A stretch of DNA of 64,000 nucleotides from Guillardia theta CCMP2712 (lineage: Eukaryota > Protista > Cryptophyta). A program made the translations under genes and the position numbers. Shown in pieces: positions 37,732 to 54,179 of this stretch; the first letter of the stretch is position 1, and the number at the start of each line of letters is the position of its first letter. The DNA lies in assembly GCF_000315625.1 (NCBI RefSeq), contig NW_005434532.1, positions 98,703-162,702 on the forward strand, in the 5' to 3' direction. Below the pieces are notes generated by a model, which searched no databases, was not told where the DNA came from, and saw nothing but the letters and a program-made list of their open reading frames with translations.

Positions 37732-40700
37732 ATGTTTGCCTTGAAAGGATCAGGTAGCACGCGAACCATTGGTGAAGCTCAGCTACTGTTCTGGGTTCAG
37801 GTTCGAAGACTTACGACAACTCGTAGCAAGTGACTCTCTTGCAGCGAATGATGGACTTGAAAGAGGAGCCTAGCGTCGACATGTTTCGAGACGGCTCTAT
37901 GTTTCTCAGCATTCTACGTCGCATGCTGGGCGAAGACGTTGGTATGCGATGCCTCCTATCCCGTACCGATTGTTTACTGCAGGACAACATCATTCGCGCG
38001 CTTGAGGCAGGGGTCAGCTCTCCTGCCCGCACGCAAGAGCAGGTTCTGCAAAATCTGCTAATGATAGAGGCGATGCTGCGAGAGGAGATAGGACACGTCG
38101 ATCAAGTCGAGGTGATGGAAGTCTATCAAGGAAGACGAGAAGCGATCGCCACTATCCTTCTTGCACTCTACCAGCTTTACTGCAAGAGATGCACCACTGA
38201 AGTGAAACGCGTTCGCGTGCGATCAAGAAAAGGTATCAAGCCGCATGATACCAGTATTAGCCGACAGGCGGAGCCGGCATGGGACGAGGCGGCAGAAGGG
38301 AGTGCACTGAGCTTACCGGCGAGTTTCGCATCCTCCCTTGGCTCTGACCAGACGCCTGCTAAGATTCTTGCTCATGCTCGCTGGTCGACGTCATGGCTTG
38401 CTGCATGCTCGCCAAAGTTTCAGAGGTCGTTTGTGATCGCGCGTGTTGCTCTGACTTGCCTCTTCTCAGGTCCTTATGTCCTCCTTCCATCATGACCCTG
38501 TGGGATCACGTGAAAGATGATGTTCACCGCGATCACTTCAACTTGCAGAGCATGCAGGGCAGTGACTTGCAAGCTGTGTGGGGGGAGGGCCGCTGGTTCT
38601 CCCGAGCCTGCATGTCGGCAGCTCTATACGCCGTCTTGCTTCACTCGCTCGGGGAAGATGTTGATGTCAGTGAGGCTGAAGATCGAGGAAAGCTGAGGCT
38701 CGTGGTCAACCACTTGCAGGCTTGCGGTGTCAAGGTTCGACTGCTCGTTTGCTCACTTGAGCGATTCCGCTAGCCTGACTGCCGGCCCCAGGTGAAGCTG
38801 GTCGCGCACGCCGACGTTGAGGAAGAAGAAGTATACAAGTCTGCGGGGGCTCATGCGGCGATCCTGGACGGAGTCGCGATGATTTTCATCCGATCGTTCC
38901 TGTCAGTCGAGCAGATCCACCAGCAAACGGTTTCACTGTGGAAGAATTTCACAGAGAACCACCCGCAGGAGGCGAGCAGGAGTGAATTTCGAGCTGAGAA
39001 ACCTTTGGACCTTGAAGACGCGCTTGCCATGTGGATGTCTTGTGAATTGCAACTCTGCAGACATTCAAACCTCCCGGTAGTCCGCCAGCTGTTCGACCAG
39101 CTGTTCAACTCCAACACTTCGAGCACCGTTGAGGAGCTTCAGATGGACATCAGCGACGGCAAAGCTCTTCTTCTTGTCTTGTCGTCTCATGCTCCTGACC
39201 TGGTCACGTCGGCATTACCTTCTGACATGCTCGCAAGAGGTGAAGAGGAGGGAGGAGGAGCTGCCGGGCGGTCGACAAGGACCAAGTCTCTTCTTGTCCT
39301 TGCCTCCCTCAAGGTCTGTGCGAAGCTGCAGCTTCTGTCTAGCAGCGTCTTTGATAATGTGAACACGCATGCTCCTCCTCACCTGCATGTTCTCCTGCAA
39401 GCGCCAGACCTTGTGTTCGTCTCCTCCGCCATGAAGCCGCTGGTTCTTCTTTTCCTTTCGCTCCTCCATGTGAAGCTCTCGGGAAATCGACAGGCGGAGG
39501 GGAAGAATGAGTCAGCAGCAGGGCCCTCAGACAGCGGCAGAAAGACGCAAGATGAGCTTCTGCTAGGAAGCACTATCGGGGGATCGAACTTGGTCTTGCA
39601 GCCCCTGCAGATGTCAAACTCGTTGCGAACGCCGCACAAGCAGTTGACGTCTGCGATTGAGAGTGTCAGCAACAGCTCTCAGAGTCAGAGCTCTCCTGCC
39701 AGCCTGCGAGGCGCGGGAGGTAGCGGATCTTCTCCCTCCTCCCAGCAGAGGACCAGCAGCGGGTTGTCGGAAGTTCTCATTATCCAGAGCCCGACGCAGA
39801 GCGAGCAATCGGAGCCCTCAGCCTCTCCCAGCTACCTTGACGAGTCATCCTCCTCCCCTTTGCCCGCTCCCACCTGGCGCACGTCATCTCCCTATCTGCT
39901 CGCTGGTGGAGAGCAGCAGGAGAAGTCAAGCGGCGCTCTCGATCAATCGGGAGGAAGCTCGAGAGCTGGAGGAGTTGCTCCGGTTGAGCTGGAGGAGCAG
40001 CTTAAACAGCAGCAGGACGAGAATGTGAACGTCAGGAATCAACAGAAAGAAGAGGAGGAACAGGAGCGGGGACAGGAACAGGAACAGGAGGAGTCTGGAA
40101 ATGGGCAGGAGAATGCAAAAGAGGAGGAGGAGGAGGAGGAGGAGGAGGAGGATCAACAGGATGGGGAAGAAAGGTTGGAAGAAGCGAAGCTGATTGCCAG
40201 AAGAGAGACTTGGTCGCCTCGACTTGATCTCAGCAGAAAATCAGACGGGGGGGAGCAAGTGGTGCAAATGAGAGCCAGCGAGGAAGGAGGACACGAGGAG
40301 CCTGAAATAATGCGACAAAGTTGGAAGATCGAGGAGTTTTCAAATGAGCAATGTGATGACACAGAGAAAGAGTTGCCGTCACTGTCTACTTCCCTCAGCT
40401 CATCGTTCAAAAGTTCGAGATTGGCGTCTCAAGACTCGAGCTCTGACGTGCGAGACCTGATGCGTGCACAAACGTTCAACCAACACAAGACTGACGGAGG
40501 TCAAGATGAAAGTAGAAACCATGACGACGATCGTGATTTTGACAACAAACATTATGATGGTGGTGATGAAAATGTTTCTTTGGTTCGAGATGGTGGAGAT
40601 TCGACAATTGACAAGCAAAGAGATACGACGAATGTGTTGGATGATAATTACCTTTATGTCCAAGAAGACAGCATACGACAAGACGAGGAGACCTCAAAGG

Positions 40701-41699
40701 GTCTCCGTACCAGCAGAATCGGTGGAGAGGAGGATGTTGCAGATGAAGGACAGGAAGAAAGCAACATTAGAAGTGACATGAAGGAGACTCTTGAGACTTC
40801 AGGGCCTACAGTACAGGATGAAGCAGCTGATTTGACGCCACCGAGCCGTCATCCTCCTAGGGAGCAACACGCATATGACGATAGCGCGAGGATCTCAGGG
40901 AGCCTGGAAGGCAAGGTTTGTTCCGTTGCTTTTGACGATGATCGGCGACATGGTGAGAAGCATGTGTGTGTCTCATCAGAACAAGAGGAGGAGGAGATGG
41001 ATCAAGCTCAAGATAACGAGAATGATGTTGATACACTTGGCAACGTCCCTACCACGTTCGAAGCTGTGCAGGAAATCCAGACAATACAAGATGAAGATGA
41101 AAAGAAGAAAGTTTCTGCACTTTCGAGAGAGCTAGTCGTAGCTGATGACCTTCAAGGGCTTGATGGTGAAGGCAAAGAGACAAGTCAAGTTGACTCTTGT
41201 GCGGACATATCAGCGGATGTTCATCAGGAAGGGAAGGACGAGGGCAACGACTCGCTGCTGTCGGTTTGGAATTCGCAGGGCAACATCTTGAAGGACCTTC
41301 AGCTCACTCGACTGTCCCTGCGCTTGTCCGAGGCTCCTCGCGATGTTCCGCGGACTTTCGAGGATGTAAGAGAAGAAGGCGAAGTAGAATCGAGCGAGTC
41401 ACCTGCCGTCCTGCCGCCTTCCGACACTCTTGCGACCATGGACGGAGAGGAAGGAGGATCATACAGCGATGAAGGACAGGAGCAAGATGAAGCGCTTGTA
41501 AATGAGGAGGAGGTAGACGACGGTGATCAAGGCCGTAAGGAGAGCGCTGGAAAAATTGCGGAGGAACAAGTTACGACGAAGGCGGAAGAAGAAGATGAGG
41601 AGGAAGAATTGAACTATCAAGGCCTTGATACAGAAGTGCAAGAAATGGTCAAGGAGGAGGAGAATGAGGAGGAGGAGGAGGAGGAGGAGGAGCAGGAGG

Positions 41700-41731
<32 letters not shown>

Positions 41732-42628
41732 CAGCAGCTTGAAGTGCCTGTGGAGCTATTCGACGAGGGCAAAGGAGGGAATGGAGAGGAAATGGACGAG
41801 GGTGACAGATTGCTTCATCAGGGTACTCCTAGGGAAGAGAGAGATTCCGTGACAGAGGAAGAGGAGGAGGCGGAGGAGGTGGCAGCGGTGGCGGGGAGGA
41901 GGAAGAGGAAGAGGCAATGGTGAATGAGGAGGAGGCGGGGAGAGGAAAGGAGGAGGAGGAGGAGGAGGAGGAGGAGGAGGAGGAGGAGGAGGAGAGGGAA
42001 AAGGAGTATGATGCACGTGATTGTTCCTCTGCGCATGAAGCCTCGTTGACCTCAGGAAGGGATGATAAGGTCGAGTTGCTCCTTCTACCTCAGTCTCCTC
42101 ACTTGTTGTCTGCAGTCGCAAGTCAGGGAGATGGAGATTGAAAGTCATTCTCGTAGAGACCTGACGACGGAGGACTGGCAAGCAAGTCTTCACGTCGAGG
42201 AGGGGGAGGACGAGGAGGAGGAGATAGTGAAGAAGGAGGACACGGAGGAAGAAATGGAGGAGCAGGAGGAGCAGGAGGAGGATAGGCAGCGAGTGCTCTC
42301 CTCGTATGGACGGCTTGCTACGGATGTGTCAGGAGGTGCCGGCATGGAGCAGAAGCATCGAGCTGAGGAGGGAGATGCGATGCTGAGCAAGCAAGGAAAC
42401 GCTCCTCAGACCCCAGAGATCAAGAAGCGACATGTTGGCGCAGTCAGGGAGACCAAGAGGCAGCAAGAGTCTTGGATCGGCGAGTGTCAGCTAGTTATGT
42501 GATAGGATTGTGATTTTTCGGTTGACAGGAGCTGGAGCAGATCGGAACGATACTGTCGCTCGTCCATCCACCGCTCCCGGGAAAGTTTCTTCAGCACACA
42601 ATGGGGCAGAACAGGTAAAACTTGCCAG

Positions 42629-42699
<71 letters not shown>

Positions 42700-45595
42700 T
42701 CTTTTCTTCTTGTTTTTTCGTGCTCAAGCTGAAATCTCGCATCAGGGATCTGTGCTTCCTGGAGGAAAAGATCAAAGGAAGCTGAGACTTGAGCTACAGC
42801 AGGAAAGAGTTTTCTTGATTTTTCTTGAATACCATCCCTCTCTGTCCTTCGAGCTCTCTTCGCCTGATGCCGTCAGTGTCTCACTTTGCTGAAAGCTGAG
42901 ATTCGATTGCTTTTGCATATAGAGTGATCAAAGCACATGATGTTGTTGTTTTCCTTGTGATCTTTGAATGTTGTTGTCCTGGTGTTGGATTCTGTAAACC
43001 CTTATCTTGATTTCTCCTCGAGTCTGTTCCATCAGTTTGTGAAATCTTTCTGTCAGGCGCAAAGAGACATCGAGAGATCTCGAGCTGCAGCTGAAAAGGT
43101 TTCTGTCCCCAGCTGACTTCCAGTTGCTGAACCCTGTCTCAGGAGCGAGCAGAGCTGCGCAAGAGGATAGGACGAGAAGCCTTCCAGCTCCTGCTGGGCA
43201 TGCAAGAGGAGGCCGGCCAAGATGTGCGGGAGGCGCAGCAGGAGAGTCGCTGCCTTGATGATGAGCGAGAGTGCGAGGAGATGGAGGCAGGGGAGGAGGA
43301 GAAGGCAGGGGAGGAGGAGAGAAGAGGTCAACTGATCCCGATGTTATCATCCGAAGCTGGAGATGACGACAGAGCACGGAGCGTACGACAGGAGCGTGAG
43401 ATGATAGAGGAGGAGGAGGAGGAGGAGGAGGAGGAGGAGGAGGAGGAAAAGGAGCATGAGAAGGGTTTGGATAAGGGGATGCATGCTGCCAGAACAACAA
43501 CCAGATTCGAAAGACACGAAGAAAACATCAGTGAACGCTCTCCTCCAAGCTTGCTGCAAGTATGTTTCTAGATGTTTCTTGAATAACTTTGTCATTACGA
43601 TGTACATGTTCTGTTGATTAATTGATTTTATGATTTCTTACAGGAATCGTCCCAGATGCATTCGTCACATCAAAGCGAAGTCAGTGAAAGAATGTCGCCT
43701 TCCAGAACTTCGCGAGTAGCTTTGATCACTTGCTTTGTGTTTGCAAACTCAACTACATGTCAGAACCGTATCGATCATGACGTCACTGCAGCTTCTGGTG
43801 ATTGTCAAAACGTCTTCTTTCTTTTCCTGCTTATCCTTGCTCAGATCGTTTCCTGTCGCTGAGCTCCATCCGTGAAGAGCGTGAAGGACACAGGGAGGAT
43901 GAGCTTGTGTCGGAGGAGAGAGGAGGAGCAGGTGAAGGGAGGGAGTCCAGCCGGCCCGCTGCTCATGGCGCCTCAGGCTCGCGTCAGTTGTCGGAAAGGT
44001 CGAGCTCCAAGTAGGAGGAGCCGCATGAGTCTCGCACTGACAGAAGCTCGCGCAGGAAACAAGCTTGGTCGCAAGAGATTCTCCTCCCTCCCCAACCTCG
44101 AGATCAGGATGAAATCGACAAGTCAAGGTCCTGGAGGATGCAGCTCAAAAGCATTCTTTCCTCCTCCTCCTCTCCGTGTGCTCCTACAGACGCCTCCATC
44201 GGCTCTGCAGCCCTGCCACGTGCTCCCAATGTTACGGAGCCGTTGATGGGGTCAGAAGCGAAACAGAGCAGGCGAGCATGATGATGTCCGAGCAAGGCTA
44301 TTTCTTGCAGGGCGCAGGAGCCTTCGAGATCTGAGCGAGGGGAGGAGGAGGCGACTGAGAGCGATAGCGTGGAGGAACGCAGGCTGCAGAAGTTCCTTGC
44401 GCTGAGGAGGAGGAGGGAGGAGGACGCGCAGATGAGAAAGCAGAGCTCGATGACCAACAGCTCGGGCCCGTCGGTGAGCAAGAGGACCGTGACTCCAGCA
44501 GGAGCCTCCGCCAGCAGGTCTGTCGGTGAAGTTGGGGTGCAGTTGGCGAGGTGAAGGAAATGTTGGCAGGCATTCAAACAAGAAGATCATTCGCAATGCC
44601 ATCGCTCATGTCTGTCTCGTCGCGGTTCGCTTCCACTCCCTCTCTCTTGGTCTCCTTTGAAGCTCTACCTATGTTCTATCTCCTTGACACTTTCCTCGCT
44701 CTCAACCCTTCCCCTCCTCCTCCTCCCTCTCAACCCTTTCCCCCTTCCTCGATCTGAGACCTGCTCTCCTCGCGGTCTCAATGTCTCCTCGATCCTCTGC
44801 TCGCTGGTTCAAAGGTCTGACTCGATCGCAGGTCGTGGAGCACAAGAAGCGCGATGCTGTCCTCGGCCTGCTGGACTCCTGTGGCAGCGAGACCGCAAAC
44901 TTCTGCATCCTCCTCGTGCGAGACCCAAATCTCCGATACAGGTTGAGATAACATGTGATGATGAGAGGCAGAGGCAGAGGCAGATGGAGTGTGAGGACGA
45001 GGAAAGGGTTTCAAAGTGATCGTTCTCTTGATAGAGGTCTCTATTCCGTCGATCTTGTGGAGAGCCGAGCACAGCTTTTGAGTGGGACAGGTCCCAAGGT
45101 AAAACTCTGAGGGTAGAGGAGTTGAAGGGGTGCAAGGGAGGGCGGGGGGAGCAGAAGGGGAGCAGGAGGGGGAGCAGAAGGGGGGATTGGGGGAGGGGGA
45201 GAAGAAGGGAGAGGAGGAGGGGGAGGAAGGAGTGGAGGTGTTGTGGACTAAGTTGCATGGCAAGTTCGTTACAGTCGACATGATACGCGAGTTCCTCAAG
45301 TACGACTCAGGTGAGGGGATGTGAAGGCGAAGAAAGCATGAAAGTAGACTAGAGAAAACAGAGGTCATGGTGAACGAGGCAGAGAGGGAGGGAGGGAGGG
45401 AGGGAGGGAGGGAGGGAGGGAGGGAGGGAGGGAGGGAGGGAGGGAGGGGAACTTAAGTTGGAGGGTCAGATGAGGAAGGAGTGAAGCTGTGCTGCAGGTA
45501 CCAAATCGTTCCGGGTGCTGGAGACGAGAGACTTCAGCTCGTCTGTAGATGGAGTAGTTTTACATCCGATGACTTACAAATCAGTTAAGATATAA
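37732..45595 (+). CDS. CAMSAP: CAMSAP/Patronin-family microtubule-binding protein: extra CH + CAMSAP N-terminal region + CAMSAP-CH + acidic linker + CKK
   Basis: LLFWVQ|...FRDGSMFLSIL (CH); AKILAHARW; AHAAILDGVAMIFIRSFLSVEQI; KPLDLEDALAMWM; DISDGKALLLVLSSHAP; C-terminal SNKKIIRNAIAHVCL...NFCILLVRDPNLRYRGLY...GTGPK...IREFLKYDSGTKSFRVLETRDFSSSVDGVVL (CKK); stop 45593-45595. Confidence 0.88.
42628..42698 (+). repeat. (GCTCCT)n hexamer microsatellite, intronic
   Basis: Direct reading. Confidence 0.95.
45385..45447 (+). repeat. (GGGA)n tract in last CAMSAP intron (G-quadruplex/H-DNA potential)
   Basis: Direct reading. Confidence 0.95.
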
Positions 45596-45656: not shown

Positions 45657-46921
45657 TCAATCTCCATGTATAGCTTTCAGAATTTGTCTTGTGAATACTG
45701 CTGGGTCGGCATGATGAATGATGCTCCTGGTCAGCTCGTCACATATCAAACAGCACAGCAATCATGCCCGCTCACCTTCCATACACAAGACCTGCGGCAC
45801 CCATCTCAATGAACTTGCGCGCGTCTTCGATCATGCCTTCTTCATCTCCCTTGTCGCTTCCTCGCAGCAGAACCTGCGAGGGCTGGCACACGTGCAAGAT
45901 AGTCTTGACGTCCTGGATGTTGACAGGAGGGTCGCATTTGAGGATGTCGCCTCCTAGCTCGCAAGCCAGCCTTGCTAGCGGCGCTGTGATGCTCATATCT
46001 GTCTCCAGCACAAAGGAATCCTTGTTCTCATTCCACTTCACCGCCAGCACCTCGACGATGAGCGGCATGTTCCATTTCGTGCAGGAGTTGCGCAGCGTGC
46101 AAACGTTCCGGACCGTCTGCTTGTGAATCTCGACGGCACCAGGCGCGTCCTCGGGGAGCTTGAGGAGAGTGCAGATGACGCCTGCTGCATCCAGCCGGAT
46201 CGCCTCCTCAATGATGTTCTCGTTCTGCAGCTCGCAGAAGGGCAGGCAAGGGAACTTTGCGGTGTACACGTTCGAGACATCACAGCGCAGGATCAGCGCA
46301 GGCACAGGACATCCTGCAGCCTGCGAGGCTGTGAGGAGGAGATGTGCTTGGCCAGGAGAGAGCTGAATGGAGTTGGGATGCAGCTGAACAAGAATTTTTA
46401 GCACGTCAGACATTGACCTGCAATGACAGTCAGGAACGAACAGGCAAGAAGTTTACTCACTCGATGCCAGCAAGGAAGCGGCCATCATTGAAAATTCCAT
46501 GATCCACTGCTATGTTGAGCATGCGTCCATCCCTCGTGTTGAACAGCCGCTTGGCGCGAGCAGAGCGGTCAAATATGTGCAAGGAACGAACATGTGTGGG
46601 AGCTGTAGAAGGATCGGATAGCACTTTTGTAGCTTGGTTGAGCTTGGCAATCCTGTTACGAACTGATCGCTCGTCTCTGATCGGCTTTCCCGTCATTGTA
46701 CACCATCTCTCGTACAAGTCTACCACCGTCTTCCATGCCCGAGCCGTCTGGGGCTTGATCTGTGAGAAAATCTTGGCAAGTTCTACATCCTCTTCATCCT
46801 GGTAGTTAGGGACCCCTCGCTTCCTTCCTCCTGACGCCTTTCTCTCTCCCTTGTCCTGCATCTTGTCGCCCTGCCCGTCTCCATCGTCCATCTTCCTTTC
46901 ACTGTCTTCCATCTCTGCCAT
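45657..46921 (-). CDS. Fusion: Myb/SANT-like N-terminal domain + class I aldolase (DhnA/FbaB-like, DeoC/LacD TIM barrel), 3 exons
   Basis: Exon 1 (46921-46461) runs without a break from RKRGVPNYQDEEDVEL...AWKTVVDLYERW...RDERSVRNRIAKL into RAKRLFN...IAVDHG; introns 46460-46418 and 45775-45727; MPLIVE, ELGGDILK (Schiff-base Lys), VLLRG and GAAGLVYGRSI motifs. Confidence 0.88.
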
Positions 46922-47099
46922 GCTGAGGAATGAGAAGGTAGGGTTGGGTAACGGTTGACACAGGGGAAGGGGGGTGAAGGGTGGCACAAGTCCTAGTTCC
47001 AGCTATAAGCTTGAGAGCCAAGGGTCCCTCCACCCCCCCTCCTTCCCAATTGATGTTCAAACAGAGACGTAACGGTCAAACCAAGGACCTCATCCCCAT

Positions 47100-50675: not shown

Positions 50676-51671
50676 TTACAAGAGACAAGTTGAGAAGGAG
50701 ATCGCGTCTCTCTTCGGGCTCCAGCCTTGCTTCCACTTGAGGTCGTACTCAAAGTCTGCCTCAACCAACTTCGTTTCCCATGCTGGCCCGCTCTTGACGT
50801 ACTCGAGGAACTCGGGGGTGCCGGGATAGATCACGTTGTCAGCTGCGATCACTGTACCTTTGCCGACGATGTTCAGCTGCTGCAAGCGCTTGAGGTCAGG
50901 GAGGTAGAGGGACTTGTTGTGGTCCAGGAAGACAAAGTCCGCGTGCTTCACTCGGTCGGCAACCTTAGGGATGACGTCACCTGACAGGCCCACGACTATG
51001 CTGACCGAGTCTTGAAGCCCAGCGTAGCGAATAAGCTGAGACGCGACGTCAGCGTGAGCTGGATTGTACTCTATACAGTAGAGATGCCCTCCTGCTGCCA
51101 AGTTTCTTGCTGTCCGCATGGCAGAGTAACCAAAGAACGTGCCTATCTCGAGAGACGTCCGGATACTCAAGCCCCTCGTCTTGATCTCCTCCTCCAGTAT
51201 CTTGCCTTTCTCTGACCCGAGCTTGTACATCGGATAGAACTTGCCAAACTCGTCCATGGCCGCGAGGATCTCGTCTATGTTCCCCTCCGACGCGTGCGAG
51301 AAGATGAAGGGAAGGATGTCTGAGGGCTGAGCGTACGGCCATTTCACATAGAAGTCACTGCTCGAGTCAGTCGCTACTGAGGGTCTTGCGGGAGGAGCTG
51401 CGAGCAAGGAGAAGATAGAGAGCACGGAAGTCGCCGAGGAAATGAACTTTCTGCGCCGAAAGTCCGACGTCGTCATGGTTATGCGCTCCTTCCCAGGTCT
51501 GGGAGGGCGAGGATTGCGAGGAGAAGAGAAGGAGTAAGAGGAGGAAGAGATCTGCGACTGTGTGCTTGATGATGTTCCGACATACCGACATGGTGGCGAG
51601 AGGAAGGCGCCAGACCCGAAGGCTCCTGCTCCCGCCAGCCCCACCATGACTCGAAGCCACCCTGCCCCCAT
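50676..51671 (-). CDS. COMT: Catechol O-methyltransferase-like protein with plastid/thylakoid-type leader, intronless
   Basis: LEIGTFFGYSA (SAM motif), FVFLDHNKSLYLPDL, IAADNVIYPG (D-D-N metal ligands). Confidence 0.9.
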   Translation of the reverse strand: MGAGWLRVMVGLAGAGAFGSGAFLSPPCRYVGTSSSTQSQISSSSYSFSSPRNPRPPRPGKERITMTTSDFRRRKFISSATSVLSIFSLLAAPPARPSVATDSSSDFYVKWPYAQPSDILPFIFSHASEGNIDEILAAMDEFGKFYPMYKLGSEKGKILEEEIKTRGLSIRTSLEIGTFFGYSAMRTARNLAAGGHLYCIEYNPAHADVASQLIRYAGLQDSVSIVVGLSGDVIPKVADRVKHADFVFLDHNKSLYLPDLKRLQQLNIVGKGTVIAADNVIYPGTPEFLEYVKSGPAWETKLVEADFEYDLKWKQGWSPKRDAISFSTCLL

Positions 51672-51741
51672 GGCTAAAAAGATACGGAGGAATCACACAG
51701 GTTGAGGGGTGGGGTACCAAGAGTGTGTCGGGGGGTCGGAA

Positions 51742-54179
51742 ATGGTGAAGAAAGGGGAGGAGATATGGCGGGGGCAGGCGATATGCGGGCAAGAGACAGT
51801 GAGGATGGAGAGACGATGCCTTCGATGCTCTCATTGTGGGAGGGAGGCGGGTGACATGAGCCAGCAGCTCTCCGTCGCTCTTGGGCAGGGAAGGGTTTCG
51901 GTATGCCAGAAACCATGCAAGACCTTGCCAAAGCTTGGAGGAGGTTACGATGCTGAGCAAGCCTGCTGCTGCGAGCGAGGGGGCTGCGATGAGGTTTACT
52001 GCAGCAAACGTTGCCGTGAAGATGATCGGCAGCGCCATCGCATCTCATGCGGTGGTCGAGAAAACGAACACTCGAGAGATCTGAGGAGATTCGCACGAGG
52101 AGCTGGAATGGAACACCTCCTGCTCCTCTCCAGGTTGGTTGGTCTCATTCTTGACCGCCAGGCAGACAGCAGCAATGGCATGGAAGAAGCGCTGGAGGAG
52201 GCGTGCACGCGTCATGATCTAAGCATGCTTTCTGTTGGGTGCGAAGCCGGTCTTGATGTTCGTGTGTCGGGGGGTCACGACGATGATAACAAGGATCACA
52301 AGGAGGATTGCAGCGACGAAGAGAGCGAGGCCTGGGTCTTGTTTTCATCTCTGATAAGGTTTGAAGTCGATTGTCGAAGTCACGAGCGAGGGGAAGAAGC
52401 CGGTCGCCAATACCTTCAAGGTGTAAGAGATTTGTTCATGAACAAACCTTGCTTCCTGAAGTTCTTGAGATTGGTGAAGCAGCTCATGGTAAGCGTTTTC
52501 GTGCCGAGCCCTTTGATTTCCTATTGTCAAGACTTGATCAAGACGGACGTGGAGGACCAGCTTCGGGAGGAGGCAGAGGCAGCCATGTCCAGCTTCATCG
52601 AAGGAGTGATGGCTAACGACGGAACGGACGCATACCATCCCAACGATGCGAATCCTTGTGGGGACGAGAAGCAGGACGGCGCTCGAATATTGCGAGAGCG
52701 AAAATTAGCTCGTCTGGCCCAAAGTGCGCTAGAGAAAAGCTCGTCGACCAATCCCTTTGGAGACTCGTTCAACATAGTTCATGCATTGATTCCCGGTATC
52801 TGCTCCTGTGCTCACTCTTGTGTGCCGAATGCCCTGGTAGAAGCTGCGTATGACGAGCAAGGGAGGAATCTGATTCGGGTTGTTGCTCTCAGAGACATCG
52901 GGGATGATGAAGCAATCTCTATCTCCTTCATTGATCACAACCAGCCGATAAATGAACGAACCGCAGCATATCGCGAGCGGTTCGGGCTGAAATTTTGTCC
53001 ATGCATGAGGTGCAACTATGAGCGAGGATCTGTCACGGATCTCAACGTTTCTCAGCTTCGAGCTCTTGGCGATCTTGCGATGCAGCAACATCGTTATCAA
53101 GACGCCTACGAACTTTACGGGAATATTTTAGCTCTGCACCCAAACGAGCCGGAAGCCTTGTTTGCTCGTGGTGGGGCTCTGCTGGAGGCTGGTTTGTGGG
53201 TTCATGCGCATCAAGCCTTTCGAGAAGCTGCTCTCCTAGCGCCAGGGCATGAGCGACTGACTGCCCTCCACCTCAAGGAGATGGCGTATTCTCTTGAGGT
53301 AGGGTCAGACCCGGAGAAGTGGGGTGACGAAAGGGAACACGGAAAACAGTCGTGTCCTCGCTTCCATCCTGTTGTTGAGGGCAGAGCATTTGTTACATAC
53401 GGTGAACATCCCGTCGTTCCGCTCGCTGAGTGTCAACTGGCTGTGGATATGGCGGAAGCAGCCGCATCGCGAAGGGGTGGATGGACTACATCTCGACATT
53501 ATGCGGTTCCTACGACAGATCTGCCGGTCCACGAACATGATGAAATTCTTTGCTGGTTTCGAAAACATCTTGCTTGTAGGCTGGGACCACTGCTCGCTCT
53601 TCAATATGGTAAGCTACATCTGACTGTAGTTTGAAGCCAACATTGTTTTTGATTAGGAGCGGATATGGTCGGGGAGAAGGGGTGTTTTGTGCGAATATTT
53701 GACGCGTTCATAGTCAAATACGCTGCGTCAGGTGGACAGGTTTGAAGTCCTTGATATGACTTTGATTTCGACTCAACAATCTTGTTCCCCGCAGCGACAT
53801 CTTCCTGTTCACAGAGATCAATCGACTCATTCATTCACTATTGCATTGAATGCTAGGAGCTGCTATGAAGGTGGAGGCACTTACTTCTGTAAACTTTCTT
53901 CCATCTTGATAGACATCTTAAACTGATGACATGCCGTCAGGTGGTCTCGGAACAGCGATAAAGCCCGAGCAAGGACATGTCCTGTCATTCGAAGGCGACA
54001 TGTTGCATGGAGGAGAACCCATGTAGTAATTTCGACCTACTCTCGAATTGATGTTACTCTCGAATTGAGTTTTGCTCAGTACGTCGGGCGTCAGGTACAT
54101 CCTGGCAGCGTTTACGTACATCGACGTGCCATCACCGGAACGATCTACATTTTCCGTCACATCGTCTGACTGGCCGTGA
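51742..54179 (+). CDS. SET/MYND-like + TPR + 2OG-Fe(II) oxygenase fusion
   Basis: CLRCSHC...YCSKRC...H (MYND-like), AHSCVPN...ISISFID...CPCMRC (SET/post-SET), TPR helices, WTTSRHYAVPTTD, LPVHRD (HxD), YEGGGTYF, LHGGEPITSGVRYIL (distal H, R); three short 3' introns. Confidence 0.85.

What the first reader, a model, noticed from the sequence alone, without database searches (positions are those of the whole stretch)
45657..46921. SANT/Myb-like DNA-binding domain fused to a bacterial-type class I aldolase: candidate one-component sugar-phosphate-sensing regulator
Seen: a single exon encodes a basic NLS-like RKRG, then a three-helix pattern (NYQDEEDVELAKI...P...AWKTVVDLYERW...RDERSVRNRIAKL), and continues in frame into a complete TIM-barrel aldolase, so the fusion is not a splicing artefact. 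AVDHG Asp, IVE Glu, Schiff-base Lys (DILKCD) and YGR are kept; the usual RGG loop reads RGS. Knowledge: DhnA/FbaB/LsrF-type aldolases are mainly prokaryotic, and Streptococcus pyogenes LacD.1 is a precedent for an aldolase repurposed as a metabolic sensor. Inference: a horizontally acquired aldolase, since given two spliceosomal introns, was joined to a eukaryotic DNA-binding module (DUF6818-like as recalled) and may couple a metabolite to transcription. I know of no described protein with this architecture.
Basis: partly seen in the sequence, partly recalled or inferred. Interest (0 to 1): 0.85.

Follow-up and report, generated by a model that had tools for sequence, protein, structure and literature searches.

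The report
Transposon DNA-binding domain fused to aldolase
In the alga Guillardia theta a sugar-splitting enzyme of bacterial ancestry carries, at its front end, a DNA-binding module that comes from a "jumping gene" (PIF/Harbinger transposon); the fusion is real, expressed, kept by selection and found only in Guillardia and its sister genus Hanusia. What it does on DNA has not been tested.

Summary
On the minus strand, 46921..45657, a three-exon gene (GT-AG introns of 43 and 49 nt) encodes a 390-aa protein. It is identical to the annotated Guillardia theta protein GUITHDRAFT_166179.

Transcriptome-derived proteins of Hanusia phi and G. theta carry the same fused reading frame.

Residues 30-128 fold (AlphaFold2, pLDDT 94-97 over 40-100) into a basic Myb/SANT-like helix bundle. 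The best structural matches are the Zeste, TRF, GT-1 and Sap1 DNA-binding domains.

By sequence this region is a divergent relative of DUF6818. I show that DUF6818 is the Myb-like accessory protein of PIF/Harbinger transposons: it lies next to DDE_Tnp_4 in three of three loci examined, and two of them show terminal inverted repeats with 3-bp target duplications.

Residues 113-390 form a complete DhnA-type class I aldolase barrel. Asp140 and the Schiff-base Lys314 are kept.

Other cryptophytes (Hemiselmis, Rhodomonas) have the same aldolase without the extra domain, so the fusion is a young, lineage-specific event. The aldolase part then evolved about three times faster, and both parts are now under strong purifying selection (dN/dS about 0.02-0.03).

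A metabolite-sensing regulator remains plausible but is unproven. The scan had already noted this same stretch (s1-430566).

The parts
46461..46921 (-). Exon 1 (codons 1-153 plus 2 nt). It encodes the acidic tail, the Myb-like domain, the junction helix and the first strand of the aldolase with Asp140.
   Evidence: identical to P0209
46418..46460 (-). Intron 1, 43 nt, GT..AG, phase 2.
   Evidence: the splice is confirmed by the transcript-derived proteins P0001, P0210 and P0211; 41/43 nt conserved in the environmental Guillardia-like contigs L029 and L030
45776..46417 (-). Exon 2, the bulk of the (beta-alpha)8 aldolase barrel.
   Evidence: Pfam PF01791 E 1.3e-12; PDB MJ0400 E 6.6e-7
45727..45775 (-). 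Intron 2, 49 nt, GT..AG, splits the codon of Arg368.
   Evidence: the splice is confirmed by Hanusia P0210 and G. theta P0211
45657..45726 (-). Exon 3, the last helix of the barrel (SIIHHADP...HGD) and the stop codon.
46835..46921 (-). Acidic, low-complexity N-terminal tail, residues 1-29 (net charge -4, pI 4.4).
   Evidence: pLDDT about 60
46586..46834 (-). Myb/SANT-like domain of the Harbinger Myb-like (DUF6818) type, residues 30-112. It has the basic arm GGRKRG (46814-46831) and helices 42-55, 60-77 and 84-100. Net charge +6, pI 9.9.
46538..46597 (-). Junction helix, residues 109-128. Helix 4 of the DUF6818-type domain runs without a linker into the N-terminal helix of the aldolase.
   Evidence: Predicted as one helix. 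DUF6818 homologues match up to about residue 124, and aldolase homologues match from residue 113-119.
46502..46504 (-). Codon of Asp140 (AVDHG), aligned with Asp33 of MJ0400.
45937..45939 (-). Codon of Lys314 (DILKCD), aligned with the Schiff-base lysines Lys184 of MJ0400 and Lys177 of the Thermoproteus tenax FBP aldolase.
45850..45867 (-). Phosphate-loop motif LRGSDK. The second Gly of the otherwise invariant RGG is Ser341; Lys343 is kept.

Best explanation
This is a real chimeric gene, expressed and kept by selection, and restricted to Guillardia and Hanusia.

Shown:
- The cryptophyte orthologue of a bacterial-type DhnA (archaeal-type class I, Schiff-base) aldolase gained the DNA-binding Myb/SANT-like domain of a PIF/Harbinger transposon accessory protein (DUF6818 type) at its 5' end.
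- The domain is joined without a linker to the aldolase's first helix.
- After the fusion the aldolase part evolved about three times faster.
- Both halves are now under strong purifying selection.
- The standalone gene is gone from G. theta.

Inferred:
- The basic arm and the basic third and fourth helices bind DNA, as Harbinger Myb-like proteins do.
- The barrel keeps Asp140, Lys314, Lys343 and the Gly-Arg loop, so it still binds, and probably still cleaves, a ketose phosphate.
- Solved relatives of this aldolase type are decamers (my knowledge of the MJ0400, T. tenax FBPA and LsrF papers). The protein would then display many DNA-binding domains on one metabolite-binding scaffold.
- The most likely working mode is therefore a DNA- or chromatin-tethered aldolase whose occupancy or conformation links a sugar phosphate to a DNA-bound function, such as gene regulation. 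An acidic tail precedes the DNA-binding domain, as in many activators.

My confidence in the anatomy and origin is about 0.9. My confidence in the DNA-tethered, ligand-coupled mechanism is about 0.4. The single figure given (0.5) is for the statement as a whole.
For: - Gene model and identity to the annotated protein.
- Fused frame present in transcriptome-derived proteins of two species.
- N-domain fold: pLDDT 94-97 over residues 40-100, with four helices. Best structural matches are the Zeste DNA-binding domain (Z 8.7, rmsd 1.9 A over 65 residues), NgTRF, GT-1 and Sap1; most of the top 50 are Myb/SANT domains. Foldseek's top hit is Sap1 (prob 1.00, E 0.06).
- Sequence kinship of the N-domain: 63 hits in total at E <= 1e-3 among 1.84 billion representatives, most of them over query residues about 20-125 and a few to the aldolase start. 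Of the 57 aligned sequences, 41 carry PF20681 and 4 carry Myb_DNA-bind_6. All five near-invariant positions (G36, N39, P57, W63, R82) are kept.
- Harbinger link: DUF6818 genes lie tail to tail with DDE_Tnp_4. In L036 the pair is bounded by 52-nt inverted repeats and a TTA duplication. In L035 it is bounded by 23-nt inverted repeats and an AGT duplication. In L037 the neighbouring transposase gene is split and not annotated.
- Role of Harbinger Myb-like proteins (bind the transposon ends and the transposase; nuclear import): PMC9392472.
- Aldolase: model pLDDT 89.6, pTM 0.90; Foldseek top hit MJ0400 ADH synthase at E 4e-17, then T. tenax FBPA and LsrF. The catalytic Lys and Asp align.
- Phylogeny: the cryptophyte clade has 100/100 support. 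The fusion is sister to the Rhodomonas-like P0070 (90/89), with a stem of 0.9 against 0.29 substitutions per site.
- The aldolase is single-copy in G. theta.
- Selection: Myb-like part 9 synonymous to 1 non-synonymous change (omega 0.03, Fisher p 1e-5); exon 2 14 to 1 (omega 0.02, p 2e-8).
- Charge pattern.
Against: - There is no direct evidence for DNA binding, nuclear location, oligomeric state, catalysis or ligand response.
- The N-domain does not reach Pfam's own threshold for DUF6818, or any Myb family, on its own.
- Structural Z scores of 7-9 are middling for small helical domains (note).
- SANT-type domains can bind proteins or histone tails rather than DNA.
- About 17 positions that are invariant in bacteria and in the standalone cryptophyte enzymes are changed in the fusion (G341S in RGG, Asn to Ser in GRN, Pro to Val next to Glu276, and others). 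Catalysis may therefore be altered or lost.
- The equivalent of the proton-shuttling Tyr (Tyr146 of T. tenax, Tyr153 of MJ0400) could not be aligned with confidence.
- The selection test rests on few substitutions from two very close environmental relatives.
- RNA reads could not be examined.
Confidence: 0.5

Rival explanations
1. Enzyme first. The protein is still simply the cryptophyte catabolic ketose-phosphate aldolase. The captured Myb-like domain serves protein-protein contacts or localisation, in the way Harbinger Myb-like proteins bind and import their transposase, possibly with a transposase-derived partner. It plays no part in transcription or metabolite sensing.
For: - Harbinger Myb-like proteins bind their transposase and mediate its nuclear import (PMC9392472).
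- G. theta has at least 16 DDE_Tnp_4 loci.
- The aldolase is the only copy in the genome, so the ancestral enzymatic job would have to be done by the fusion.
- The catalytic Lys and Asp are kept.
- Bacterial relatives sit in sugar-catabolic clusters with DeoR, a Lyx_isomer cupin, a PfkB or FGGY kinase and GFO_IDH_MocA.
Against: - The domain keeps the basic arm and basic helices 3 and 4 (net charge +6).
- It keeps all near-invariant residues of the transposon-encoded family, which fits retained DNA binding.
- The threefold acceleration of the aldolase after the fusion suggests that its job changed.
Confidence: 0.25
2. Pseudoenzyme scaffold. After the fusion the barrel lost catalysis. It now serves only as an oligomerisation platform or ligand-binding platform for a transposon-derived DNA-binding protein.
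For: - About 17 otherwise invariant positions are replaced, including in the RGG and GRN loops and next to Glu276.
- The stem branch is long.
- There are precedents of aldolases used as regulators: LacD.1 of S. pyogenes and the FBA of Francisella (PMC5636795).
Against: - The Schiff-base Lys314, Asp140, Lys343, the Gly-Arg loop and Glu276 are all kept.
- Omega of 0.02 over the barrel is as expected for a working active site.
- Ser in place of the second Gly of a phosphate loop is compatible with phosphate binding (my inference).
Confidence: 0.15
3. A neutral or artefactual chimera. The N-terminal region is an exonised transposon remnant that is not translated or has no function, and the working protein starts near the barrel.
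For: - Standalone orthologues start just before the RLFN helix.
- One G. theta transcriptome protein (P0211) has an artefactual 5' end.
- The environmental contig L030 carries G36W at a near-invariant Gly.
Against: - The first ATG of the open frame is at 46921, and there is no in-frame Met between residue 76 and Met132 that would give a complete barrel.
- The Myb-like part has 9 synonymous to 1 non-synonymous change (p 1e-5).
- It differs from Hanusia at only 3 of 83 residues, as conserved as the barrel.
- Transcript-derived proteins of two species include it.
Confidence: 0.05

Closest known systems
DhnA-type (archaeal-type, class IA) Schiff-base aldolases: M. jannaschii ADH synthase MJ0400 (2QJG), Thermoproteus tenax FBP aldolase (1OJX), E. 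coli LsrF (3GKF)
   Same: Residues 113-390 give a complete (beta-alpha)8 barrel. Foldseek E 4e-17 to 1e-14, TM 0.72-0.84. Sequence E 4.6e-9 to MJ0400. The Schiff-base Lys, the Asp on strand 1 and the Gly-Arg loop align.
   Different: Identity is only 18-24%. It belongs to a separate subfamily that is otherwise bacterial (45-50% identity between the standalone cryptophyte enzymes and planctomycete, verrucomicrobial and Gemmatimonadota proteins). RGG reads RGS. The catalytic Tyr equivalent is unclear. It carries a 110-residue N-terminal DNA-binding-type extension that none of these enzymes has.
Standalone cryptophyte orthologues (Hemiselmis andersenii A0A6U5AYN2 = P0067, Hemiselmis virescens P0035, Rhodomonas-like P0070/P0014)
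   Same: Same aldolase clade (100/100 support); 50-55% identity; nuclear genes with introns (L012; retained intron in P0014).
   Different: They are 277-305 aa with no N-terminal domain, and an in-frame stop lies upstream of the ATG in L008. They keep RGG, GRN and VEPL, which the fusion has changed.
Myb-like accessory proteins of PIF/Harbinger transposons and their domesticated descendants (NAIF1, MSANTD family, Arabidopsis ALP2 and HDP2)
   Same: A homologous (DUF6818-type) trihelix domain with conserved aromatic residues. The gene now lies outside any transposon, with no DDE_Tnp_4 on its contig, and is under purifying selection. This is the signature of molecular domestication (PMC9392472, PMC5339849, PMC9710019).
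   Different: Known domesticated Myb-like genes are stand-alone proteins that pair with a transposase-derived partner. Here the domain is covalently fused to a metabolic enzyme of bacterial ancestry.
SETMAR-type chimeras (a host enzyme domain fused to a transposon-derived DNA-binding part); from my own knowledge, not tested here
   Same: A lineage-restricted fusion of a host enzymatic domain with a DNA-binding module captured from a DNA transposon.
   Different: In SETMAR the captured part is the transposase itself, at the C-terminus of a histone methyltransferase. Here it is the accessory Myb-like protein, at the N-terminus of a sugar-phosphate aldolase.
Aldolases that moonlight as regulators: S. 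pyogenes LacD.1; Francisella FBA (PMC5636795)
   Same: An aldolase fold used to link sugar-phosphate status to gene expression.
   Different: Those proteins have no DNA-binding domain of their own (LacD.1 acts through other regulators), and they belong to other aldolase families. The analogy is not a test.

Membership tests
DeoC/LacD class I aldolase family (Pfam PF01791), DhnA-type branch | Sequence match above Pfam's gathering score over the whole model | tested here: met
   Exon 2 alone scores 48.3 bits; the Hanusia orthologue scores 62.6 bits over model positions 4-224 of 229; the cut-off is 23.8.
DeoC/LacD class I aldolase family (Pfam PF01791), DhnA-type branch | (beta-alpha)8 barrel fold | tested here: met
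   AlphaFold2 model: pLDDT 89.6, pTM 0.90, alternating strands and helices. Foldseek: MJ0400 E 4e-17, TM 0.75-0.82; T. tenax FBPA and LsrF next. This is a predicted structure, not a solved one.
DeoC/LacD class I aldolase family (Pfam PF01791), DhnA-type branch | Schiff-base lysine and the strand-1 aspartate | tested here: met
   Lys314 aligns with Lys184 of MJ0400 and Lys177 of T. tenax. Asp140 aligns with the Asp of the MJ0400 MDHG motif.
DeoC/LacD class I aldolase family (Pfam PF01791), DhnA-type branch | Phosphate-binding loops (GG-x-K after strand 7, G-R after strand 8) and the proton-shuttling Tyr | tested here: inconclusive
   G-R and the Lys are kept. GG reads GS, and GRN reads GRS. The region of Tyr146/Tyr153 aligns ambiguously.
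DeoC/LacD class I aldolase family (Pfam PF01791), DhnA-type branch | Aldol cleavage or condensation activity | not testable with these tools
   Needs an enzyme assay or borohydride trapping.
DUF6818 (Pfam PF20681) | Match to the Pfam model at its gathering score | tested here: not met
   No hit at E <= 1 for exon 1. No hit in the whole G. theta genome. The model covers only the part from helix 2 onwards.
DUF6818 (Pfam PF20681) | Significant sequence similarity to bona fide members over the domain | tested here: met
   phmmer E 9e-9 to 1e-3 against 1.84 billion representatives, over query residues about 20-125. 41 of 57 aligned sequences pass PF20681. The matched regions coincide with their Pfam domains. 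The ESM Atlas feature search also leads to DUF6818 clusters, but at a score of 0.80 that is a lead only.
Myb/SANT (trihelix) DNA-binding fold | Three-helix bundle with conserved aromatic core, similar to solved Myb/SANT domains | tested here: met
   Helices 42-55, 60-77 and 84-100 at pLDDT 94-97. Zeste Z 8.7, NgTRF 7.9, GT-1 7.3, Sap1 7.1, and c-Myb, TRF1, LUX, DMAP1 and ISWI SANT in the top 50. Four homologues hit Myb_DNA-bind_6, best E 2.3e-5. The Z values are middling for small helical domains.
Myb/SANT (trihelix) DNA-binding fold | Binds DNA | not testable with these tools
   Only indirect evidence: net charge +6, a basic arm and basic helices 3 and 4.
PIF/Harbinger Myb-like accessory protein | Encoded beside a DDE_Tnp_4 transposase, inside terminal inverted repeats with a 3-bp target-site duplication | tested here: not met
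   Met for the homologues: L036 (52-nt inverted repeats, TTA), L035 (23-nt inverted repeats, AGT) and L037 (split transposase). Not met for the G. theta gene or its paralogue: none of the 16 DDE_Tnp_4 hits is on contig C142 or C95. The domain is therefore transposon-derived, not part of a transposon.
One-component (sensor plus DNA-binding in one chain) transcription regulator | Ligand binding changes DNA binding or transcription | not testable with these tools
   Only the architecture (DNA-binding-type domain, rigid helix, ligand-binding barrel) is shown.

The most novel reading that the evidence does not exclude
A eukaryotic 'one-component' regulator that arose recently from three sources: a bacterial-type aldolase acquired by an ancestral cryptophyte, a Harbinger transposon's Myb-like DNA-binding domain, and spliceosomal introns. 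In this reading it works as a decameric, multivalent DNA-binding protein whose binding or activating capacity is gated by a sugar phosphate held, perhaps covalently, at Lys314. It would be a natural example of a metabolic enzyme converted into a metabolite-gated transcription factor by capture of a transposon domain.
Probability: 0.2. Interest if true: 0.85.

Novelty: new variant of a known kind. Interest (0 to 1): 0.58.

Why it matters
Domestication of transposon proteins and moonlighting of glycolytic enzymes in gene control are both known. A covalent fusion of the two has not been described: my searches for DUF6818, for this protein's accessions, and for a DhnA aldolase in Guillardia found no paper.

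The case is unusually clean for three reasons:
- The ancestral standalone enzyme survives in sister lineages (Rhodomonas, Hemiselmis) and can serve as a control.
- The donor domain family can now be tied to PIF/Harbinger elements, which also gives DUF6818 a biological identity.
- Both halves are under selection.

If the protein binds DNA in a ligand-dependent way, it would show how a new metabolite-responsive regulator can arise in one step in a eukaryote. If it does not, it is still a documented example of a transposon domain grafted onto a gene of bacterial ancestry.

Tried and rejected
Transcript support therefore rests on transcriptome-derived database proteins.
- Direct Pfam and NCBIfam assignment of the N-domain: nothing significant. 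PF20681 finds nothing in the G. theta genome, and it also found nothing in the control genomes, so that blank is weak.
- An alternative 5' exon suggested by P0211 (different first 16 residues): rejected. Those residues are encoded on the opposite strand at 46905-46940, so they are a fold-back artefact of that transcript assembly.
- Full-length structure prediction with a combined alignment (A4): abandoned. MAFFT placed the DUF6818 fragments against the barrel, so the two halves were modelled separately. Nothing can be said about how the domains pack together.
- The idea that the bacterial subfamily is a sulfofructose-phosphate aldolase of the sulfo-EMP2 pathway: dropped, because SqiA is a class II metal-dependent enzyme. 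The substrate of the subfamily stays unknown.
- The metagenome scan for further fusions found only bacterial relatives and one intron-bearing Hemiselmis-like contig.
- Searches for papers on DUF6818, on the protein's accessions, or on Guillardia with DhnA found none.
- Joined spliced model: I did not hand a self-joined spliced protein to any tool. Searches were made exon by exon by reference. Whole-protein work used the database record P0209, which equals the model.
Full report
**Organism and locus.** The window is contig C142:98703-162702 of an 87.1-Mb, 669-contig assembly. I confirmed this: the protein encoded here is letter for letter the NCBI record XP_005821588.1/EKX34608.1, 'hypothetical protein GUITHDRAFT_166179 [Guillardia theta CCMP2712]' (P0209).

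**Observation.**
- On the minus strand the first ATG of an open frame is at 46921.
- The coding sequence runs 46921..46461, 46417..45776 and 45726..45657. The two GT-AG introns are 43 and 49 nt. The product is 390 aa.
- Exon 1 alone holds the acidic tail, the putative Myb-like region and the start of the aldolase up to ...AVDHGIFNDGRFLAGI. The fusion therefore does not depend on any splice.
- Following the operators' rule, I searched the model exon by exon by reference (window:46463-46921:-, window:45778-46416:-, window:45660-45725:-). I never handed a self-joined protein to a tool; that joined step was left out.
- For whole-protein work I used the database record P0209, which contains the three exon translations contiguously.
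- Both junctions are confirmed by transcriptome-derived proteins: Hanusia phi P0001 (365 aa, 96% identical, reads ...FLAGIESMSDVL...), Hanusia P0210 (reads ...VYGRSIVHHADP...) and G. theta P0211.
- P0211 differs in its first 16 residues. These are encoded on the opposite strand at 46905-46940, so they are a fold-back artefact of that assembly and not another exon.

**The aldolase half.**
- Exon 2 matches Pfam DeoC/LacD (PF01791) at E 1.3e-12, and the Hanusia protein matches at 5.5e-17 over positions 4-224 of 229.
- The nearest solved relatives by sequence are the M. jannaschii ADH synthase MJ0400 (E 4.6e-9), the Thermoproteus tenax class I FBP aldolase and E. coli LsrF.
- In those alignments Lys314 (DILKCD) sits on the Schiff-base lysines Lys184 and Lys177. 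Asp140 (AVDHG) sits on the Asp of the MJ0400 MDHG motif.
- A model of residues 105-390 has pLDDT 89.6 and pTM 0.90 with the strand-helix alternation of a TIM barrel. Foldseek ranks MJ0400 first (E 4e-17, TM 0.75-0.82), then T. tenax FBPA and LsrF.

**Where the aldolase comes from.**
- The gene is single-copy in G. theta.
- A search with the closest standalone relative (P0002, 278 aa) found more than 3,000 proteins at E <= 1e-10.
- The nearest are cryptophyte proteins of 277-305 aa: Hemiselmis andersenii (P0067), H. virescens (P0035), a Rhodomonas-like transcript (P0070, which shares its N-terminus with the Rhodomonas salina record P0014), and environmental relatives.
- Next come bacterial proteins at 45-50% identity (Lacipirellula, Opitutaceae, Pedosphaera, Gemmatimonadales).
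- None of the other cryptophyte proteins has the N-terminal domain. In the transcript-like contig L008 an in-frame stop precedes the ATG. A related environmental contig has introns (L012).
- In a maximum-likelihood tree the cryptophyte sequences form one clade (100/100). The Guillardia/Hanusia pair is sister to the Rhodomonas-like sequence (90/89), in line with their classification as I recall it. The stem of the fusion pair is 0.9 substitutions per site against 0.29 for its sister.
- So the bacterial-type aldolase was already in cryptophytes. This is consistent with one old transfer, but the donor and the root are unresolved. The fusion came later, in one lineage, and was followed by faster evolution.
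- About 17 positions that are invariant in the bacterial sample and in all standalone cryptophyte proteins are changed in the fusion. Examples are RGG to RGS, GRN to GRS, VEPL to VEVL and NVYG to NVYT. The catalytic Lys and Asp, Lys343, the Gly-Arg loop and Glu276 are kept.
- Bacterial relatives lie in sugar-catabolic clusters with a DeoR regulator, a Lyx_isomer cupin, a PfkB or FGGY kinase and a GFO_IDH_MocA oxidoreductase. This points to a ketose-phosphate aldolase of an isomerase-kinase-aldolase route. The substrate is unknown.

**The N-terminal half.**
- Pfam and NCBIfam give nothing significant for exon 1.
- An exhaustive phmmer search of 1.84 billion representatives gave 63 hits at E <= 1e-3. 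Most cover query residues about 20-125. A few short ones cover the aldolase start (113-153). Only the Guillardia/Hanusia cluster has both parts.
- Of the 57 aligned sequences, 41 carry PF20681 (DUF6818) and 4 carry Myb_DNA-bind_6.
- The Pfam model starts only at helix 2. The family in fact also shares a basic arm and a first helix, with consensus GGRxxGxxNY...LL. The 'NLS-like RKRG' is this arm.
- With that alignment AlphaFold2 gives pLDDT 94-97 for residues 40-100 and helices 42-55, 60-77, 84-100 and 109-128.
- A search of about 48,000 PDB representatives puts the Zeste DNA-binding domain first (Z 8.7, rmsd 1.9 A, 65 residues). NgTRF, GT-1, Sap1, DMAP1, Cdc5, LUX, ISWI SANT, TRF1 and c-Myb R1 follow. 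Foldseek's top hits are Sap1.
- The Z values are middling for small helical domains. However, the list is dominated by one fold class, and the weak Myb Pfam hits of homologues agree with it.
- The domain has net charge +6 (pI 9.9). The arm and helices 3 and 4 are basic. An acidic tail (net -4) precedes it.
- DUF6818 homologues match up to about residue 124 and aldolase homologues match from residue 113-119. The model draws 109-128 as one helix. There is therefore no linker between the two parts.

**What DUF6818 is.**
- No paper mentions DUF6818.
- In three of three loci examined, a DUF6818 gene lies tail to tail with a DDE_Tnp_4 (PIF/Harbinger transposase) gene. The loci are an environmental eukaryote (L035), Trametes cubensis (L036) and Trametes maxima (L037). 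In L037 the transposase is split into two ORFs and is not annotated; each piece is below the Pfam cut-off on its own.
- In L036 the pair is bounded by 52-nt, 98% complementary inverted repeats that start GGGCCTG..., flanked by TTA on both sides. In L035 it is bounded by 23-nt inverted repeats flanked by AGT. These are the hallmarks of PIF/Harbinger elements.
- Such elements encode a transposase and a Myb-like protein that binds the element's ends and the transposase and brings the transposase into the nucleus (PMC9392472).
- G. theta has at least 16 DDE_Tnp_4 loci. None is on the contig of this gene, or on that of its only paralogue: a 385-aa ORF on C95 with a Cys-rich region, the domain and a coiled coil.
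- The N-terminal domain is therefore transposon-derived and now part of a host gene.

**Selection.**
- Two environmental contigs from very close Guillardia-like relatives (L029, L030) carry the same gene with the same introns.
- Against L030 the Myb-like part (codons 30-112) has 9 synonymous and 1 non-synonymous change (omega 0.03, Fisher p 1e-5). Exon 2 has 14 and 1 (omega 0.02, p 2e-8).
- Against Hanusia the Myb-like part differs at 3 of 83 residues and the barrel at 10 of 256.
- The counts are small, but both halves are clearly constrained. The single non-synonymous change in the domain, G36W in L030, hits a near-invariant Gly and may be an assembly error or a real variant.

**How it probably works.**
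- Shown: the architecture, its origin, its expression at the level of assembled transcripts, and its constraint.
- Inferred: the Myb-like part binds DNA, as its transposon-encoded relatives do. The barrel still binds a ketose phosphate through Lys314 and probably still cleaves it. Aldolases of this type are decamers in the solved structures (my knowledge of the MJ0400, T. tenax and LsrF papers; not tested here). The protein would then carry many DNA-binding domains on one metabolite-binding particle.
- The rigid junction helix and the acidic tail fit a regulator, but they do not demonstrate one.
- I rate a DNA- or chromatin-tethered, ligand-coupled function as the most likely reading (about 0.4). 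The rivals, as scored in the Rival explanations section, are an ordinary enzyme with a protein-binding or localising appendage (0.25), a pseudoenzyme scaffold (0.15) and a functionless appendage (0.05).

**Comparison and novelty.**
- The barrel is a member of the DeoC/LacD family, DhnA branch. The fold, the threshold and the catalytic Lys and Asp are met. The phosphate loop and the Tyr are inconclusive. Activity is untested.
- The N-domain works like, and descends from, Harbinger Myb-like proteins. It fails the Pfam DUF6818 threshold and is not in a transposon.
- Known domesticated Harbinger Myb-like genes (NAIF1, MSANTD, ALP2, HDP2; PMC9392472, PMC5339849, PMC9710019) are stand-alone proteins. 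Known regulatory aldolases (LacD.1; Francisella FBA, PMC5636795) have no DNA-binding domain.
- No paper names DUF6818, this protein, or a DhnA aldolase in Guillardia. The databases call it hypothetical or 'fructose-bisphosphate aldolase'.
- I class it as a new variant of a known kind: domestication of a transposon domain by fusion to a host enzyme.

**Surroundings.** The next gene downstream was noted by the scan as CAMSAP-like (37732-45595). Upstream there is about 3.6 kb without long ORFs. Beyond that lie an ORF at 50676..51671 (-) and a Cys-rich ORF at 51709..53634 (+). Nothing suggests a functional link, and I did not annotate them.

Noticed in passing
L002:1132-2289 (+) = G000:C95:45511-46668: The only paralogue of the N-terminal domain in G. 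theta. It is a 385-aa intron-less ORF with a Cys-rich PHD/C1-like region (weak Pfam hits), the DUF6818-like domain (28% identity, E 1.2e-8) and a C-terminal coiled coil. It is not next to a transposase, so it is probably a second domesticated Harbinger Myb-like gene.
   Followed up: partly
L036:6499-10782; L035:6840-9752; L037:6001-8974: DUF6818 genes are the Myb-like ORF of PIF/Harbinger transposons. They lie tail to tail with DDE_Tnp_4, inside inverted repeats (52 nt and 23 nt) with 3-bp target duplications (TTA, AGT). In L037 the transposase is split and not annotated. This gives a Pfam 'domain of unknown function' an identity. Only three loci were examined.
   Followed up: partly
Pfam PF20681 relative to window 46586-46834 (-): The Pfam DUF6818 model begins at helix 2. 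The conserved basic arm (GGRxxGxxNY) and helix 1 of the family lie outside it, which helps explain why divergent members such as this one are missed.
   Followed up: yes
window 46905-46940 (+ strand), protein P0211: The UniRef G. theta transcriptome protein A0A7S4P037 has an artefactual N-terminus. Its first 16 residues are translated from the reverse complement of the gene's own start region (a fold-back in the assembled transcript).
   Followed up: yes
L030:199-663 (codon 36): An environmental Guillardia-like contig carries Gly36 to Trp at a near-invariant glycine of the basic arm. It may be a real variant or an assembly error.
   Followed up: no
L011, L031, L032, L033, L034 (bacterial contigs): Bacterial members of this aldolase subfamily sit with a DeoR regulator, a D-lyxose-isomerase-type cupin, a PfkB or FGGY kinase and a GFO_IDH_MocA oxidoreductase. 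This looks like an uncharacterised isomerase-kinase-aldolase sugar route in planctomycetes, verrucomicrobia and relatives.
   Followed up: partly
G000, 16 places listed: G. theta carries at least 16 DDE_Tnp_4 (PIF/Harbinger transposase) matches, several in long open frames (up to 504 aa). No DUF6818-type Myb-like partner was detected beside them by my searches.
   Followed up: no
P0014 (Rhodomonas salina) versus window 46418-46460: A Rhodomonas transcript with a retained intron places an intron within one or two codons of G. theta intron 1 (between FLPG and IEDM). The intron is possibly shared; this cannot be resolved from the protein alone.
   Followed up: no
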